DNA of 64,000 nucleotides from Dimorphilus gyrociliatus (Eukaryota > Animalia > Annelida): positions 3,749,689 to 3,813,688 of the forward strand of contig CAJFCJ010000005.1 in NCBI GenBank assembly GCA_904063045.1, written 5' to 3'. This document shows, piece by piece, positions 7,101-64,000 of this stretch (position 1 is its first letter; the number at the start of each line of letters is the position of its first letter). A program made the translations under genes and the position numbers. The notes under the pieces are model-generated. The model saw nothing but the letters and a program-made list of their open reading frames with translations, was not told the origin of the DNA and ran no database searches.

Positions 7101-7959
7101 TATTTGACGAAGGGTGCGGCGGTCCAAATTTAATTTTTAGCCGACTGTCAAGAATCGAATAAGCGAGAAATGTGAGAGGAATAACAGCAGAAATCCGGCG
7201 TCCGAAACGGCGTTATGAGAATTTTTTTTTTATTAAATATTTTCTTTTCCCTTGTTTGCTTTATATACACATATACAATATTACAATATATATAGTATAC
7301 TGCATAGTTTGCCAAAGAGTCATCTGCGCTTTACACAATCATGGAAGCGTATTGCTGTAATTATCGATAGGAAATTTCTTTCTTTTTATCCAATTTCTCC
7401 CTTACTCTTTTATATATATATATATATTCATTTTATTATATTCGTCTGTCTCTCTATCAATCTATCTATCTATCTATCTGTGCAGTTTTATATATAAAAA
7501 AATTAGGTATTAACGGTCTTACATAGAGGATTAAAAAAAAAGGAAATGAGAATGAAAGAGAAAGAGTAAATAGCTTATACCAAACTTCATTAATGAGTAT
7601 ATTTTCTCTTTTTTTTCCTCCCCTCTTATAGTGGCAGTGGTAATCTGTATGGTAAGAAAAAAGATCCGAATAAAGGAAAAAGGGTTAAGAAACGCTACAA
7701 TTCGTAAGTTGACACTATTCCAATAATATCCGAGTATACAGTTTTGTGTTAGATCGATCGAATGTAATGTAATAAAAGAGAAAAAAATTTTTCTTTCCTG
7801 TTTTTTTTTTAGAACTTCCGAATTGTTCAGAGCTTTAATAGATGGAGAAACATATAATAAACAGGATCCTCCAACGAAAGGTAAGAGAAAAAACTAAAGA
7901 AAAAAAAATTCATTAGAGTAATTTGTTAGTTTTTTTTTTTCGACAATTCCCTTTCCCTT

Positions 7960-7990
<31 letters not shown>

Positions 7991-10900
7991 CTATCTATTC
8001 CTCCCTCCCTCCCTCCCTTTTTTTTATATATATATTTCTTTATGTTTATACTGTACATAGTATATTTGAATAAAGGAATAATTTCTCTTTGTTTTTTCTT
8101 CTTAATCCATTAGATAAACCTACTCGAGTCAAACTGGGGATCTACGTGAACAGCTTTTATTCCATTAGCGAACAAACAATGGTAAGGGAGCCAAATTCGA
8201 TTTGTTTGTCTGGAACATGCCCACCAAGTGTATAAATAATATCTCTATATATGTTTAGAATACTAGGGAAAAGTCGACTTTATCTAAACTGTTCTATACA
8301 CCGATAAACGAGAAAAGCAGACTTGCTTTGCCACAGATTAAAACAACGTTTGTCATTCCTTTTCTCTCTTCCACTTACACTATCTAGCTTATCTCTCTTT
8401 TTATAGATAATCTGTCAATCTATCATTTTATCAATCTATCTTTCTCTTTCTACCTTTTTTAACGTGATTTTTTTTAATATGATTTTTCTAACAAATTCGA
8501 TTAGGACTCGTCAATCAGTTTTTACTTTCGTCAAGAGTGGTACGACCCAAGGTTGGTTTACAAAAAGGAAAATGCCCCGCGACATACGTCCATACCTTTT
8601 AGGGTCGGAGATTCGGATGTTGAAAGGGTATGGCTGCCTGATACATTCTTCCGCAACGAAAAGTTCGGCAGTTTCCATACGGTTACCGTTAGAAATCGAT
8701 TTATGACCTTGAATACGACTGGTAGAGTTTGGTACGTTACTAAGTAAGTGGCCGCACGAGATTTTTCGTGAGACTATAATTGAGTGGTTTGCCGTGATTT
8801 CTCTCTTAACTTCTATACAAACATTTCTTTTTGCTCTTTCGGGGGCATGTTCCAAAAGAATTGAAAACAAAATTCGAATTTTCTGCCTTTTTTTTCCGGG
8901 AATCGTGTTTTTTTCATGTTTCGCACCTCTCTATTGAAATCAGGACTATCAACTGAGTATGTACCTGCGCCAGGAGTGGCAGGATCCTAGATTGGCATTT
9001 TCCCACATCATGCCCAACGCAAAACCGGAACACAAAATAAGGATGGGTATGGGAACCTGGGAAGAAATTTGGACACCAGACGTCTTCTTCCGCAACGAGA
9101 AAAAGGCGTCCTTTCATTCCATTAGCGTACCGAATCGTCTTCTTCAGATCAAACCCGACGGTACGTTGTGGTACGTCTCTAAGTAAGTAAAATGTCTAGA
9201 TAAATAGATTTGATGATTTGGCTGGATTGTAAACAAACCGGTGATAAGGTAAACCAAGGGATGTTTTTAAGTGAAGATTGCAAATTAATAACATTAAATA
9301 GTTAATTAATAAATAATAATAATGCGCATGGGGAAATTGTTTTTTTTAAAAAAAAAGAAACATAAAAAAAGAATGATAACTTTCTTGCTTCTTAAAAAAA
9401 TAAATTAGCTGAAAAGATGTGGTGATTAAATAAAAATAAAGTGAAAATAAGATAGATAGCTGGAGCGTACGAGTAAGAGAGCGAGAGAGAGAGATGGAAA
9501 TTGAGCGTAAAAGTTCATCTAGTAAGAAAAGGGAGAGAGAGAGAGAAAGAGTAATAAAATGGCACGGGGGGAAAAATTGAGGGGAAAAAAGAGAAAGAGT
9601 GTATGAGTGATAGAGTGCGAGGGACGAGGGGCGACATGCAGAGAGAGAGAGAGAGAGAGGGGGGGTGGAGAGGGACATTATCTACACTCAGCGAGAAAGA
9701 AAAAAATATGAAATAAGAGAAAAGAATCGATTGCGCAACACCCGGTTTAAAAGAGAAGAACCGTTTGTTTATAATCAAGCATTCGAGAGGTTAGCCAGAG
9801 GGTGTAACCAAAATCGAATGTCTATTTGTCTATACTGTATATCTTTTATATTGAGCATGCCTAAAAAAAGAAAATGTTTTATCTGTTTTCTTTCTCTTTG
9901 CTCTTTCTTGCACTGATTTCTATGTAATAATATTATTATTATTCTTTATTAATATTGTTTACTGTTATTACTTTTTTTTTATTATTGTTAAAAATTATGG
10001 TTATTAGTAATAAGTGTTCCGCCTTTCTTTTCTTTTTATCCCTAACAGAATCTCAGCGACTCTTTCCTGTCCTATGCTTTTACATAATTATCCTTTAGAC
10101 AAGCAGTCGTGCCCAATCATGTTCGAGAGTTGTAAGTAGAAAAAAATAGTTGCTAAATACTCATCTATACAGTATTAGCTTGGCTTATTTATATAAATAA
10201 ATATGAGAATTATATACAATTATTTGCAGTTGGTTATACTATGGATACCATGTACTTTGCTTGGCTAGCAAGAGCTATTGAAATAGACGAGGATGTAGAA
10301 CTACCGCAATTTACTTTAGAAGATCAAATCAAGTACGACTGTTCTCAAAACTATACGACAGGAGCATATCCGTGCCTGGAAATAAGATTTATTTTACGTC
10401 GGGATATCGGTTACTTCCTCATTCAGGTTTATATACCATCCATGCTGATTGTCATCCTGTCCTGGGTAGCCTTTTGGATCAACATCGACGCCATTCCAGC
10501 CCGCGTTTCATTAGGCTTACTTACTGTGCTTACCATGACTACCCAATCGACGGGAGCCAGATCTTCCTTACCACGTGTCTCTTATATAAAAGCTATCGAC
10601 GTTTGGATGTCAGTTTGCCTGGTCTTTGTTTTCGTATCTCTTTTGGAATTCGCCGTCGTCAACGTAATATCGCGGAAAGAAGTCCGAACAATCAAACCCG
10701 TCCGTAAGCCGCCCCCGCTCAGAAAGGATTTGGATCCAGAAACCCAATGGGACCAGGTAAATGAGTTTCTTTCCATATCATTCTCCATATTCCCCCATTT
10801 TATTTTGGCTAATTTTGATAAATTGAGAGATTTATTGCGCTAAAGCGTATTACCAACCCTTAGATATCTAGTCGCTATTCGAAACGGAATCGAAAATGGC

Positions 10901-11466
10901 GTATCTGTTTCCAGGACGACCAGCGAATGGAGAGTATAGAAATGGGCGGTAGACACGATTTTTCAGGCATTCCGGTACTTATGCCTGCTCTCCGCGTGCT
11001 AATTTCAGAATTTTTCTTATTTTCTTTCCTGCCTGCGGTTGACTATTAACGCCAGCAATTTCTTATTTAAACATCTGCCAGATGGCGCAGCGTGCCTTTG
11101 TTATTTTTCAATTTTAACTGACTGCTTCTAACCAAATGTTTATGTATAAAAATAATAAAATAAAAAGCATTTTAAGTGGTTTTTTCTATTTTTCCTATTA
11201 TTTTTACTTCATTATGTCTATTTTTGTTTTTTCTATTAAAAAACAGAAAAAATCTATTACAGTCTCTTTCTTATAAACAGATCAACATTGTCGAGAACGG
11301 ATCGGACAGGAGAGAACCACCAAAAGTCGTCGACCCCGAAGGAAAACATAAGGCTCGAAAAGTCGATAAAATCTCTAGAAAACTTTTCCCAATAGCTTTC
11401 TTACTCTTCAATATCATCTATTGGATTTTCTACGCGGTTCCACTATCCCATCCATCTAAAAATTAA
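4107..11466 (+). CDS. GlyR/GluCl-like Cys-loop ligand-gated chloride channel subunit (about 452 aa); exons 4107-4222, 7632-7703, 7813-7880, 8114-8181, [8505-8743 OR 8944-9182], 10049-10131, 10230-10756, (optional 10915-10974), 11281-11466
   Basis: Signal peptide MLCCRINLLLFATLFLWLQYG; Cys-loop CPMLLHNYPLDKQSC; loop-C disulphide CSQNYTTGAYPC; M2 with the anion-selective PAR motif (AIPARVSLGLLTVLTMTTQ); M4 FPIAFLLFNIIYW. All GT-AG junctions are phase-consistent and total 1359 nt with one alternative exon. The ligand cannot be assigned from sequence. Confidence 0.92.
8193..8881 (+). other. Predicted long-range pre-mRNA duplex (docking site 8193-8222 / selector 8843-8881) flanking alternative exon A
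   Basis: TGGAACATGCCC (8211-8222) is the exact reverse complement of GGGCATGTTCCA (8843-8854). Two further nested pairs: TTTGTTT 8201-8207 with AAACAAA 8865-8871, and AAATTCGA 8193-8200 with TCGAATTT 8874-8881. Confidence 0.7.
8505..8743 (+). CDS. Mutually exclusive exon A of the chloride channel (loops D-A-E)
   Basis: TAG acceptor, GTAAGT donor, 239 nt, phase 0 to 2; DSSISFYFRQEWYDPRL...WLPDTFFRNEK...GRVWYVTK; no stops. Confidence 0.85.
8944..9182 (+). CDS. Mutually exclusive exon B of the chloride channel (loops D-A-E)
   Basis: CAG acceptor, GTAAGT donor, 239 nt, phase 0 to 2; DYQLSMYLRQEWQDPRL...WTPDVFFRNEK...GTLWYVSK; no stops. Confidence 0.9.
10915..10974 (+). CDS. Putative 60-nt in-frame exon in the M3-M4 intracellular loop (DDQRMESIEMGGRHDFSGIP)
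   Basis: Acceptor TCTGTTTCCAG, donor CCG|GTACTT, phase 0/0, no stop, in a GC-richer island of an AT-rich intron. No homology support. Confidence 0.4.
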
Positions 11467-12609
11467 ACAGATAAACTGGTAAGTAACAAACTCAGAAGGA
11501 GAGAGAGAGAGAGAGAAAGAAAGAGAAAAAAAATGAGATAGTTTCTTTCTAAACCAATTAAATGGATTAAGTGAAACTGCATCCTTTATTTCCTTCATTC
11601 TTCTTTCTATTATTATAAAAATCACTATACAATCTTAGCAAGTAGTATAGTCTTTGATTCATCGTACTGTATTTATATACTATAATCGTTTTTTGTTATA
11701 CAGGTTTTGATGGCTGATATTTTCGATAATAGTTTTCTGCTCATTTAAAAAACAAATCGCTTTTTATTGGAATTTTTAACAACAAACATTTTAAGAAGAG
11801 ATAATAAAGAAGAAAGAATAATTAAAATAACACAACAATCTTCTTTATTTCTATATTTTTTTCTTTTGTTCTTATTTTTCTTTTCCCTGTTTTTAAAAAT
11901 TTTTATTTTGCTAAAAACTTTCTAAAAAGAAGAGAAATTCAAACAAAAAAATTACGATTAGAGGTAAAAAAAATCAAATTGTTTGGGTGGAAGGAGAGTA
12001 CGATGGAGAGCTAAGCATGGATTAGAGATAGAGCGAAACAGACAAATTGATAGATAGAGAAAAGAACGAAAAGAAATGCATAAAACAACGAAAGTAATAT
12101 TAAATAAATTCAATGGGAAAGTATCAAACGGACAACTAGGAAAGGAAAAGAAAATATTACGAATGTTTTTGGTTGGAAGGAAAAAAAAAGGGAAATTGAT
12201 TTTTTTTATAAAAAAAAAGAAACCAAAATTTTTGACAGAAATAAAAAAGAAAAGGAGAATAAAACGACGGGCAAAAAAAGTTCATAAAATGTTGTTTTAA
12301 ATAAAAATATTATAATATATTAATAAACTTGTATCAACGAGATTTTTCACTGCATATACTGATTTTGTTATGACAGTTATTTTCGTATATAAAATATGCA
12401 TATATTTCATAAATGTAATTCTATACATAATAATAATAATAATAATATATATGCAGTATGTATATATGTGTATGCTTTTATGCGCATACCACTAGGTACT
12501 GTATATATAGACGTTTATACAGCATTCGTACTGTGTATAGAAATATGTCTATACAATCGTTATTTCTACATAATTTTTGTATGTATACATTTATCTATAT
12601 ATATAGATA

Positions 12610-62640: not shown

Positions 62641-64000
62641 CTAGACGAAAATGTAGGCTGTCCAGTAGACAATGTTAAAGGTGAGAAAGGCTAGTGGAAA
62701 GGCTTTTCTTGATATTTTATCGATCTTTCTGGCCTTTTGTCGACCATCCGGATCTCGGACGTAACCGCGCTTGTCCATTGCTTCGCGGAAATTGCGTCCG
62801 TTGTTGATAATGTTAATCTGTGAGGTTAAGAATAACAAACTACTTTTTCTCAATAATGGATTAATAGCTAATGGAGGTAGGTGGGTAAGAGAAAAATTGT
62901 GTTTACAAGAAAAGTGTTATAAAGAGAGGAAAACTGATTAAAACCTGTTCAAGTGCAATCTCCTCCTGATGTGTAGGTTGTGCTGCCGCTGCTGCATGAC
63001 CTGCTAACAATGCTCTTTTCCGGAACGTATTACGAGCTGATTGACGAATTTCCTTTCTTGAAAATACATTAACAACGGCAAATTCTAGAAGAGAAGCAAA
63101 AACGAAGATCAAACACATCGACATCCAAACGTCTATTGCTTTTATGTAGGAAACACGAGGAAGCTGCGACCTATTCCCCGTCGATTGTGTTGTCATCGTC
63201 AATACAGTAAGCAGGCCTATTGTTACTCTTGCCGGTATGGCGTCTATACTTATCCAAAACGCAACCCAGGAAAGAATTACGATGAGAACGCTTGGTATAT
63301 ACAATTGAATCATATAATAGCCGATATCCCTCTTAAGAACGAAGTTAACCGACAAACAAGGATAGGAACCAGTCGTATAGTTTTGGGAACAATCTTTTAG
63401 GAAGAACTTGACGAACCTAAACTGAGGTAAATCCAGCTGACCAGAATCCATTTCAACTGGATTATCCAGCCAGTCGTAAACTAAGGTGTCCGTTGTGTAT
63501 CCAACTGTTGTTGTTTATAAAGAGAGGAATCGAGATGAAGATATATTGATATATTGATATATATATATAAAATATGAGCAGATTGAGACATGAGAGATAG
63601 ATAGATGGATAGATAAATAGATGTATACACGGCAGAGAGAACAGAATTCGAAGATTGAAGGTAGAGCGATGCAAAAAAAAAAAAATTTATTGTTTATATT
63701 GATTGCCATAACAATATAGTTTAATATATACTGACAACTTTCGAACATCATGGGACAAGTTTGTGTGTCTAGAGGGTATTTGTGCAATTTCATCGGGCAG
63801 GAAAGCGTTGCGGTAATTCTGCAGTTTTTTAATCTCATTAGGATTTTATAAAGAGTATTGATCGTAATTCTTTTTTTCATTCTTTTTATTTTATCACCTA
63901 CTTACTTGGAAACATACCACAACATACCACTATTCTTTAGCGTCAGTAGCCTATTTGGAGTTGTTATATCGTGGTATTTAGCTAATTTTTCATTTCGAAA
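62641..64000 (-). CDS. Second GlyR/GluCl-like chloride channel subunit, 5'-truncated by the window edge; exons >64000-63906, 63818-63736, 63504-62945, 62817-62641
   Basis: FRNEK...WYVSK, Cys-loop CPMKLHKYPLDTQTC, CSQNYTTGSYPC, AIPARVTIGLLTVLTMTTQ, and M4. Intron positions match the + strand paralogue, including the 83-nt Cys-loop exon. Confidence 0.92.

What the first reader, a model, noticed from the sequence alone, without database searches (positions are those of the whole stretch)
8193..8881. Docking-site/selector-like RNA duplex positioned to control the mutually exclusive exons
A perfect 12-bp inverted complement with 7 G/C pairs (8211-8222 with 8843-8854) links the intron upstream of exon A to the A-B intron. 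Two nested helices (8201-8207/8865-8871 and 8193-8200/8874-8881) extend it to about 27 bp. The upstream arm starts 11 nt after the constitutive donor at 8182, and the downstream arm ends about 60 nt before exon B's acceptor. Pairing would therefore loop out exon A and bring the donor next to exon B, the geometry known from competing-RNA-structure splicing in arthropod Dscam1. My rough chance estimate for the 12-mer alone between these two introns is about 2%. The 11-mer CAAATTCGATT occurs both in the upstream arm (8192-8202) and over exon A's own 3' splice site (8492-8502), so the downstream arm has a possible competing partner. I found no equally strong duplex that would loop out exon B. I do not know of this mechanism being described for a lophotrochozoan Cys-loop receptor, but I cannot search.
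Basis: partly seen in the sequence, partly recalled or inferred. Interest (0 to 1): 0.85.

Follow-up and report, generated by a model that had tools for sequence, protein, structure and literature searches.

The report
Intron RNA helix looping out exon A
A worm chloride-channel receptor gene uses one of two alternative exons, and the flanking introns, far better conserved than the coding sequence, can form a strong RNA helix that probably folds the first exon away; this is a known type of splicing control, here untested and outside insects.

Summary
Window 8211-8222 and 8843-8854 are a perfect 12-bp complement. Two more helices bring the core to 27 bp (local duplex -40.8 kcal/mol). The 12-bp helix has pair probability 0.84-1.0, the other two 0.68-0.96.

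- **Chance:** 0.7% by shuffling, about 1.8% among real placements in this window, 0.7% by energy.
- **RNA:** contigs from four public runs show exon A (8505-8743) and exon B (8944-9182) used one at a time. B contigs are deeper.
- **Frame:** both exons are 239 nt, so the reading frame alone already penalises using both or neither.
- **Conservation:** in a related species that differs at 23% of third codon positions, the A-B intron differs at 2 of 198 sites and the first 149 nt of the upstream intron at 3 of 149. All 27 core pairs are unchanged.

Limits:
- No covariation could be obtained.
- Conservation covers far more than the arms.
- More distant relatives have no clean counterpart.
- There is only one selector, so this is a loop-out helix rather than a competing docking/selector set.
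- The downstream arm also holds a GCAUG (Rbfox-type) motif, which supports a protein-binding rival.

My verdict is a good, untested new member of a known kind. Unchecked notes from this scan report similar candidates in other genes of this genome.

The parts
8114..8181 (+). Constitutive exon upstream of the cluster; donor GT at 8182-8183
   Evidence: Translation KPTRVKLGIYVNSFYSISEQTM. RNA joints 7880>8114, 8181>8505 and 8181>8944.
8182..8504 (+). Intron I1 (constitutive exon to exon A), 323 nt. Its first 149 nt are nearly invariant in relative L001.
   Evidence: 3 of 149 substitutions against 76 of 333 at third codon positions, Fisher p 2e-10.
8193..8222 (+). Arm 1 (docking-like), made of H3 8193-8200, H2 8201-8207 and H1 8211-8222. 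Weaker flanking pairs extend it to 8184-8232.
8492..8502 (+). Second copy of CAAATTCGATT, between exon A's CTAAC branch-like site and its AG. It is only a weak alternative partner of arm 2.
   Evidence: D13. Duplex -8.6 kcal/mol. AAATTCGA lies at three places within 8193-8881 and at four others in the rest of the 64-kb window.
8505..8743 (+). Exon A (239 nt), the minor alternative; Neur_chan_LBD positions 48-117
   Evidence: Pfam E 9e-14. Joints 8181>8505 (run X3) and 8743>10049 (run X1).
8744..8943 (+). Intron I2 (A to B), 200 nt; the most conserved stretch of the gene between the window and L001
   Evidence: 2 of 198 substitutions, Fisher p 8e-15 against third codon positions.
8843..8881 (+). 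Arm 2 (selector-like), made of H1 8843-8854, an internal loop 8855-8862 followed by a 2-bp mini-helix 8863-8864, H2 8865-8871 and H3 8874-8881. 8870-8881 is itself a palindrome.
   Evidence: The changes in L001 fall after 8862, at 8863 and after 8887, outside the 27 core pairs.
8845..8849 (+). GCAUG (Rbfox-type core motif) inside helix H1 of arm 2. It lies 102 nt after exon A's last base and 99 nt before exon B.
   Evidence: Predicted fully paired when the helix forms, P(unpaired) 0.00 against 0.28 with arm 1 blocked.
8944..9182 (+). Exon B (239 nt), the major alternative
   Evidence: Pfam E 3e-14. Joints 8181>8944 in all four runs and 9182>10049 in three.
10049..10131 (+). Next constitutive exon (start of the Cys-loop), joined to either A or B
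   Evidence: Joints 8743>10049 and 9182>10049.

Best explanation
The gene is an anion-selective Cys-loop (GluCl/GlyR-like) receptor of a small annelid. It has two tandem alternative 239-nt exons encoding the loop-D to loop-A part of the ligand-binding domain.

I propose that a 27-bp core helix, about 35 pairs with its flanks, forms in the pre-mRNA. One arm starts 11 nt after the constitutive donor. The other ends 62 nt before exon B.

The helix would enclose exon A, with its branch site and acceptor, in a loop of about 620 nt. It would leave exon A's donor mostly paired. It would also turn the 762-nt intron from the constitutive exon to exon B into an effective path of about 73 nt from donor to acceptor. 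Exon B would then be the default product. Exon A would be chosen when the helix fails to form or is opened.

Shown: the sequence, the thermodynamics, the mutually exclusive use with B contigs deeper, and the strong purifying selection on both intron stretches.

Inferred: that the helix forms in vivo and that it is what biases the choice.

The reading frame acts as a separate backstop. Each exon is 239 nt, so using both or neither shifts the frame.
For: - Exact complementarity.
- Duplex energy -40.8 kcal/mol; pair probability 0.84-1.0 for the 12-bp helix and 0.68-0.96 for the other two; present in MFE and centroid.
- Both arms are each other's best partner anywhere in the pre-mRNA 7600-11500, by 6-10 kcal/mol.
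- Chance 0.7-1.8%.
- RNA contigs show const>B in four runs, const>A or A>exon 4 in two runs, and no A>B joint. B contigs have about 5-9 times the k-mer depth of A contigs in the two runs that show both forms.
- In relative L001 the duplex is kept at -41.0 kcal/mol with pair probability 0.82.
- I2 has 2 of 198 substitutions and the first 149 nt of I1 has 3 of 149, against 23% at third codon positions.
- All changes in the arm zones lie outside the 27 core pairs: 8192, after 8862, 8863, after 8887.
- With the helix allowed, exon A's 5' splice site has P(unpaired) 0.08, against 0.44 when arm 1 is blocked.
- I2 is 200 nt, so the steric-hindrance mechanism is not available.
Against: - There is no covariation. 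The arms are invariant in every close relative reachable, so conservation cannot separate pairing from any other sequence-specific function.
- Conservation covers all of I2 and 149 nt of I1, much more than the roughly 70 nt in the helix. Extending the pairing over the rest is only marginal, p 0.03-0.11.
- Low-complexity TC/GA pairings elsewhere in this gene reach similar energies.
- Distant relatives with the same exon-3 cluster show no clean equivalent.
- Frame plus NMD alone could enforce exclusivity.
- In Drosophila Rdl exon 3, another Cys-loop mutually exclusive pair, the structure model was tested and rejected (PMC13762713).
- Depths come from contigs and are only a rough guide to isoform ratio.
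Confidence: 0.5

Rival explanations
1. The conserved intron stretches act mainly as binding sites for splicing regulators, and the complementarity is incidental or secondary. In particular, the GCAUG inside arm 2 could be an Rbfox-type site. It lies downstream of exon A and upstream of exon B. By the established Rbfox position rule, binding there would favour A and repress B.
For: - Conservation extends far beyond the arms.
- GCAUG lies at 8845-8849.
- (U)GCAUG lies 50-120 nt upstream of 4 of 9 exon-3 copies in the window and three more distant relatives, where 0.74 is expected. P is 0.003, but the distance window was chosen post hoc.
- AAATTCGA occurs at three places inside this 689-nt stretch, which looks like a repeated protein-binding motif.
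- In insect Rdl and GluCl exon 3, the regulatory elements found so far are protein-type elements (PMC13762713, PMC13512814).
Against: - The motif here is GGCAUG, not the canonical UGCAUG.
- A single GCAUG in a 200-nt intron is not rare by chance.
- This reading does not explain why a 27-bp complement of the site sits right next to the constitutive donor, with p of about 1%.
- If the helix forms, the motif is fully paired. The two readings may therefore be parts of one switch rather than rivals.
Confidence: 0.27
2. The inverted repeat is a chance match or a relic with no role in exon choice. The intron conservation reflects something else, such as a DNA-level enhancer in an unusually long intron, or ordinary splice signals.
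For: - Perfect inverted 12-mers of normal complexity at this spacing occur about ten times in this 64-kb window, in 1.8% of placements.
- The scan looked at many features.
- Larger introns in Dimorphilus often carry open-chromatin peaks (PMC7854359).
- Frame plus NMD already explains exclusivity.
Against: - The 12-mer is extended by two further helices to -40.8 kcal/mol, p 0.7%.
- Both arms sit in sequence more than 10 times more conserved than synonymous sites.
- Their placement at +11 from the donor and -62 from the acceptor is the functional geometry.
- The arm-zone changes in L001 avoid the core pairs.
Confidence: 0.13
3. This is a true competing docking/selector switch. Arm 2 toggles between arm 1 and the second CAAATTCGATT copy over exon A's 3' splice site, or another hidden selector exists, and the competition sets the A:B ratio.
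For: - The 11-mer is duplicated exactly. Its 10-nt core is kept in L001 at both places.
- The palindrome AAATTCGAATTT in arm 2 can pair with either copy.
- Tandem duplication is known to create competing selectors (PMC6071210).
Against: - The alternative pairing is only 8 bp and -8.6 kcal/mol, against -40.8.
- Both pairings would disfavour exon A, so they do not form a toggle.
- No other partner of either arm comes within 6 kcal/mol, and the runner-up sites are not conserved elements.
Confidence: 0.1

Closest known systems
Docking-site/selector competing RNA structures in arthropod mutually exclusive splicing (Dscam1 exon 6 cluster; 14-3-3xi, Mhc, srp, MRP; Yang et al. 2011 as cited in PMC13512814; PMC4691838; PMC6071210)
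   Same: - A tandem cluster of homologous exons used one at a time.
- A conserved element just downstream of the constitutive donor.
- A complementary element upstream of a distal variable exon.
- Pairing loops out the proximal exon and brings the donor close to the chosen acceptor.
   Different: - Only one selector exists, for exon B, so no competition between selectors is evident.
- The cluster has two exons.
- The animal is an annelid, not an arthropod.
- There is no covariation and no experiment.
Long-range intronic pairings controlling vertebrate mutually exclusive exons (human ATE1 exons 7a/7b, elements R1-R5; PMC7797038)
   Same: A two-exon mutually exclusive pair with conserved complementary intronic boxes whose pairing biases the choice.
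   Different: - ATE1 has competing pairings (R1 and R4 compete for R3) plus an ultra-long-range helix, validated by mutagenesis and antisense oligos.
- Here there is a single helix and no validation.
Mutually exclusive exon 3 of insect Cys-loop anion channels (GluCl exon 3a/b/c, Rdl exon 3a/b; PMC13512814, PMC13762713)
   Same: - Same receptor superfamily.
- The same part of the ligand-binding domain, near loop D, is swapped by tandem alternative exons.
   Different: - For DmRdl exon 3, the competing-structure and steric models were tested and excluded in favour of protein-bound elements.
- For SfGluCl, short intronic and exonic elements were mapped.
- No intron helix comparable to this one is reported there.
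Rbfox (U)GCAUG-dependent choice between alternative exons, and 'RNA bridges' that present or hide such sites (established knowledge, not tested here)
   Same: A GCAUG lies between the two alternative exons, in a conserved intron, inside a long-range helix.
   Different: - The motif lacks the leading U.
- No binding data exist.
- The link to Rbfox is an inference from position only.

Membership tests
Docking/selector competing RNA structure (Dscam1 exon 6 type) | Tandem homologous exons spliced in a mutually exclusive way | tested here: met
   Exons A and B are 45% identical in protein and both are Neur_chan_LBD. RNA joints show A or B, never A joined to B.
Docking/selector competing RNA structure (Dscam1 exon 6 type) | Docking site in the intron next to the constitutive exon | tested here: met
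   Arm 1 at 8193-8222 starts 11 nt after the donor at 8182.
Docking/selector competing RNA structure (Dscam1 exon 6 type) | One selector per variable exon, all pairing with the same docking site so that only one can pair at a time | tested here: not met
   There is a single strong partner, arm 2 upstream of exon B. The next-best partners are 6-10 kcal/mol weaker. The copy at exon A's acceptor gives -8.6 kcal/mol.
Docking/selector competing RNA structure (Dscam1 exon 6 type) | Arms conserved across species with compensatory substitutions | tested here: inconclusive
   The arms are invariant in L001 and, for the one arm each contig covers, in runs X1 (arm 1) and X3 (arm 2, to 8883), so no covariation is possible. 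There is no clean counterpart in L003-L006.
Docking/selector competing RNA structure (Dscam1 exon 6 type) | Disruptive mutations change exon choice and compensatory mutations restore it | not testable with these tools
   This needs a minigene or an in-vivo experiment.
Exon loop-out by long-range intronic base pairing | Stable complementary boxes in the two introns flanking the regulated exon | tested here: met
   -40.8 kcal/mol; pair probability 0.84-1.0 for the 12-bp helix and 0.68-0.96 for the other two; p 0.7%.
Exon loop-out by long-range intronic base pairing | The looped-out exon is the less used one | tested here: met
   A-form contigs are absent in two of four runs and about 5-9 times less deep in the other two. 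Contig depth is only a rough measure.
Steric-hindrance mutually exclusive splicing | Donor-to-branch distance in the intron between the exons too short for splicing (under about 50-60 nt) | tested here: not met
   The A-B intron is 200 nt.
Frame/NMD-enforced mutual exclusivity | Exon length not a multiple of 3, so double inclusion or double skipping shifts the frame | tested here: met
   Both exons are 239 nt, entering in phase 0 and leaving with 2 nt of a codon.
Rbfox-regulated alternative exon | (U)GCAUG in the flanking intron, at a conserved position | tested here: inconclusive
   GGCAUG lies at 8844-8849. (U)GCAUG lies 50-120 nt upstream of 4 of 9 exon-3 copies across relatives, P 0.003 with a post hoc distance window. 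Binding was not tested.

The most novel reading that the evidence does not exclude
The helix and the GCAUG inside it could form one switch. By default the helix hides the GCAUG and shortens the 762-nt intron to an effective path of about 73 nt. That is close to the 66-nt median intron reported for Dimorphilus (PMC7854359), so exon B would be spliced by short-intron recognition. In cells that express an Rbfox-type protein or a helicase, arm 2 would be captured as single strand, the helix would fail, and exon A would be used. That would be a structure-gated protein site deciding a ligand-binding-domain swap in a lophotrochozoan neurotransmitter receptor. It may also be one case of a genome-wide habit: unchecked notes from this scan report similar helices at ABCC4, CASK, TPP2 and an AMPA receptor gene in the same genome.
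Probability: 0.2. Interest if true: 0.7.

Novelty: new member of a known kind. Interest (0 to 1): 0.5.

Why it matters
RNA-structure control of mutually exclusive exons has been shown experimentally almost only in arthropods and in a few vertebrate genes. For the one Cys-loop receptor case tested, Drosophila Rdl exon 3, it was rejected.

This annelid example would extend the mechanism to Lophotrochozoa and to a ligand-binding-site swap in an inhibitory receptor. It is well suited to a test. The gene is compact, the whole regulated unit is about 1.1 kb and would fit a minigene, and the helix is short and clean. Its two intron stretches are about 10-20 times more conserved than silent coding sites.

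Whatever the mechanism, that level of intron conservation shows that the choice between A and B is under strong selection.

Tried and rejected
1. **Covariation.** The only relative with alignable introns (L001, Logan contig) and the contigs of runs X1 and X3 have invariant arms. No covariation test is possible.

2. **Intermediate relatives.**
   - The search for related loci with the exon A peptide in metagenome contigs found nothing.
   - An exact-pattern scan with the end of the constitutive exon found nothing.
   - Cluster members of the exon-5 ORF led to contigs that lack the exon-3 region or have it more than 10 kb away.

3. **Equivalent helix in distant relatives (L003-L006).**
   - Intron sequence is not alignable.
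   - The best duplexes are not at equivalent positions.
   - L005 is not significant. L004 is nominal (p 0.025). L003 is significant (0 of 40 shuffles) but is a messy GU-rich pairing.
   - I treat this as neither support nor refutation.

4. **A 150-nt zipper between I1 and I2 to explain the wide conservation.** The whole-intron duplex has z -3.8, but once the core is removed the rest is marginal, p 0.03-0.11. Rejected as unsupported.

5. **A docking site downstream of the cluster in L003.** Only long imperfect alignments were found. Rejected.

6. **Known RNA families in 7500-11600.** There were only two sub-threshold miRNA-like hits outside the region.

7. **Origin as the inverted ends of a transposon.** Rejected. 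The 12-mer has no other copy in the window, and the arms enclose a functional exon.

8. **Spliced full-length protein search.** Not done.
Full report
**The gene and its exons**

The stretch lies in a compact gene on the + strand, at about 7.6-11.5 kb of the window. I read its exons from the sequence and confirmed them with spliced RNA contigs.

| Feature | Coordinates |
|---|---|
| Upstream exons | 7632-7703, 7813-7880 |
| Constitutive exon | 8114-8181 |
| Exon A | 8505-8743 |
| Exon B | 8944-9182 |
| Exon 4 | 10049-10131 |
| Exon 5 | 10230-10756 |
| Optional loop exon | starts at 10864 |
| Last coding exon | 11281-11466 |

- Exons A and B both match Pfam Neur_chan_LBD at about positions 46-117. 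Exon 5 matches Neur_chan_memb. Exon 5 also carries the PAR motif typical of anion-selective Cys-loop receptors.
- The best named relatives are annelid proteins from Helobdella.
- Earlier notes of this scan name the genome as Dimorphilus gyrociliatus. I did not verify that myself.
Each alternative exon is therefore 239 nt, not a multiple of three. Using both exons or neither shifts the reading frame.

**Check of the observation**

- All three helices are exact: 8211-8222 with 8843-8854 (12 bp, 7 G/C), 8201-8207 with 8865-8871, and 8193-8200 with 8874-8881.
- With short flanking pairs, the two arms give -40.8 kcal/mol.
- In a fold of 8114-9250, pair probability is 0.84-1.0 for the 12-bp helix and 0.68-0.96 for the other two. 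The helix is in both the MFE and the centroid of 8170-8960.
- Each arm is the other's best partner anywhere in the pre-mRNA, by 6-10 kcal/mol.
- The 11-mer repeat at 8192-8202 and 8492-8502 is real. The stretch 8870-8881 is itself a palindrome.

**Chance**

- A perfect complement of 12 or more between the two introns arose in 0.7% of dinucleotide shuffles.
- In real sequence of this window, at the same geometry, it arose in 4.6% of placements. The figure is 1.8% after low-complexity matches are removed, which is about ten distinct cases in 64 kb.
- A local duplex at least as stable arose in 4 of 600 random placements.
- The match is therefore improbable, at about 1%, but not extraordinary. TC-rich against GA-rich tracts in the same gene reach similar energies.

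**RNA evidence**

Contigs of four public runs were laid on 7600-11500.

| Joint | Meaning | Runs and k-mer depth |
|---|---|---|
| 8181>8944 | constitutive exon to B | all four runs: 183, 63, 5, 566 |
| 9182>10049 | B to exon 4 | three runs |
| 8181>8505 | constitutive exon to A | X3: 7 |
| 8743>10049 | A to exon 4 | X1: 33 |
| 8743>8944 | A to B | not seen |

- The exons are truly mutually exclusive, and B is the commoner form.
- These are contigs, so the ratios are only approximate.

**Conservation**

- A 20-kb Logan contig (L001) carries the orthologous gene of a related species. Both exons are 95% identical in protein.
- Third codon positions differ at 76 of 333 sites (23%). Other introns differ by 13-28% or cannot be aligned.
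- The A-B intron differs at only 2 of 198 sites, and the first 149 nt of the upstream intron at 3 of 149. Fisher p is 8e-15 and 2e-10.
- All 27 core pairs are unchanged. The changes in the arm zones lie outside the core pairs: 8192, an insertion after 8862 with G8863A at the edge of the internal loop, and an insertion after 8887.
- The helix in L001 has -41.0 kcal/mol and pair probability 0.82.
- Contigs of a third taxon (runs X1 and X3) also show no substitution in either arm.
- This is strong evidence that these intron stretches are functional. It is not specific for pairing. Nothing varies within the helices, and the conserved sequence is several times longer than the arms.
- A wider zipper between the two introns is only marginally supported, p 0.03-0.11.

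**More distant relatives**

- Contigs L003-L007 carry the same gene family. They have two or three exon-3 copies, and also duplicated exon 4, exon 5a and last exons.
- Their introns cannot be aligned with the window, and no clean helix sits at the equivalent place.
- Complementarity between the upstream intron and the intron between the exon-3 copies is not significant in L005. It is nominal in L004. It is significant in L003, but there it is GU-rich and messy.
- The helix is thus specific to the window's lineage as far as I can see.
- The tree of exon-3 copies is unresolved, and exon A sits on a long branch.

**Mechanism**

- *Geometry.* The donor at 8182 lies 11 nt from the helix, and the helix lies 62 nt from exon B. 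Exon A, its CTAAC branch-like site and its acceptor lie in the loop of about 620 nt.
- *Exon A's donor.* With the helix allowed, exon A's 5' splice site is predicted mostly paired, with P(unpaired) 0.08. With arm 1 blocked the figure is 0.44.
- *Steric hindrance.* It is excluded, because the A-B intron is 200 nt.
- *My reading (about 0.5).* This is a loop-out helix that makes exon B the default, with the reading frame as a backstop.
- *Not a full docking/selector set.* There is one selector only. The copy at exon A's acceptor is a weak partner (-8.6 kcal/mol), and pairing there would also disfavour exon A.
- *Intron length.* If the species is Dimorphilus, whose median intron is 66 bp (PMC7854359), the helix would bring the 762-nt intron into the size range that its spliceosome handles best. 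This is an inference.

**Rival readings**

- The core of arm 2 contains GCAUG at 8845-8849, the core of the Rbfox binding motif.
- (U)GCAUG lies 50-120 nt upstream of 4 of 9 exon-3 copies in the window, L003, L004 and L005, where 0.74 is expected. P is 0.003, but I chose the distance window after seeing the data.
- AAATTCGA occurs at three places in the 689-nt stretch.
- Protein binding could therefore explain the conservation. Alternatively, it could work together with the helix, which would hide the GCAUG.
- In the insect Cys-loop genes studied, Rdl exon 3 and GluCl exon 3, the elements found so far are of the protein-binding kind. The structure model was rejected for Rdl (PMC13762713, PMC13512814).

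**Comparison with what is known, and novelty**

- The closest known systems are the arthropod docking/selector structures (PMC4691838, PMC6071210) and the ATE1 pairings in mammals (PMC7797038).
- My paper searches found no report of such a structure for a lophotrochozoan gene or for a Cys-loop receptor.
- I rate this a new member of a known kind, supported by sequence, thermodynamics, RNA usage and conservation, but not by covariation or experiment.
- The scan has noted similar candidates elsewhere in this genome (ABCC4, CASK, TPP2 and an AMPA receptor gene). I treat these as leads only.

Noticed in passing
window 62653-64000, minus strand: A paralogous Cys-loop anion-channel gene runs off the end of the window. 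Its exon-5 part is 72% identical to this gene, and exon-3-like, exon-4 and last-exon matches are also present. The two receptor genes lie about 51 kb apart in convergent (tail-to-tail) orientation.
   Followed up: partly
window 10757-11280: There is an optional exon in the intracellular-loop region. RNA joints 10756>10864 (runs X3, X12) and 10756>11281 (runs X1, X3, X12) coexist, so the M3-M4 loop is alternatively spliced as well.
   Followed up: no
L003, L005, L006, L007 (ENA contigs): Related genes in other, probably annelid, assemblies have several tandem exon clusters in one gene: exon 3 in two or three copies, exon 4 in two, the first part of exon 5 in three, and the last exon in two. The window's gene keeps only the exon-3 pair and has exon 5 fused.
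   Followed up: partly
window 8845; L003 3882, 5163, 5203; L004 6433-6460; L005 2252: (U)GCAUG motifs recur 68-108 nt upstream of exon-3 copies in several relatives, and 13 nt after the exon 3.1 donor in L005 and L006. This suggests old Rbfox-type control of the cluster.
   Followed up: partly
window 8153-8743 (run X1 record 1) and 8504-8883 (run X3 record 15): Two partly spliced A-form contigs were seen. One has exon A already joined to exon 4 while the upstream intron is still present. The other has the constitutive exon joined to A while the A-B intron is still present. They may show the order of intron removal, or they may be assembly artefacts.
   Followed up: no
window 9160/10049 (run X4): A marine metatranscriptome contig uses a GT 23 nt inside exon B as donor to exon 4, which shifts the frame. 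It could be splicing noise or come from another organism.
   Followed up: no
window 9021-9031 against runs X1 and X3: In the related taxa, exon B carries a 1-nt insertion after 9021 and a 1-nt deletion at 9031. This compensating pair of frameshifts recodes about three residues.
   Followed up: no
window 8567-8576 and 8994-9003: A perfect 10-nt complement links exon A (GGAAAATGCC) with exon B (GGCATTTTCC). It is probably chance and was not tested.
   Followed up: no
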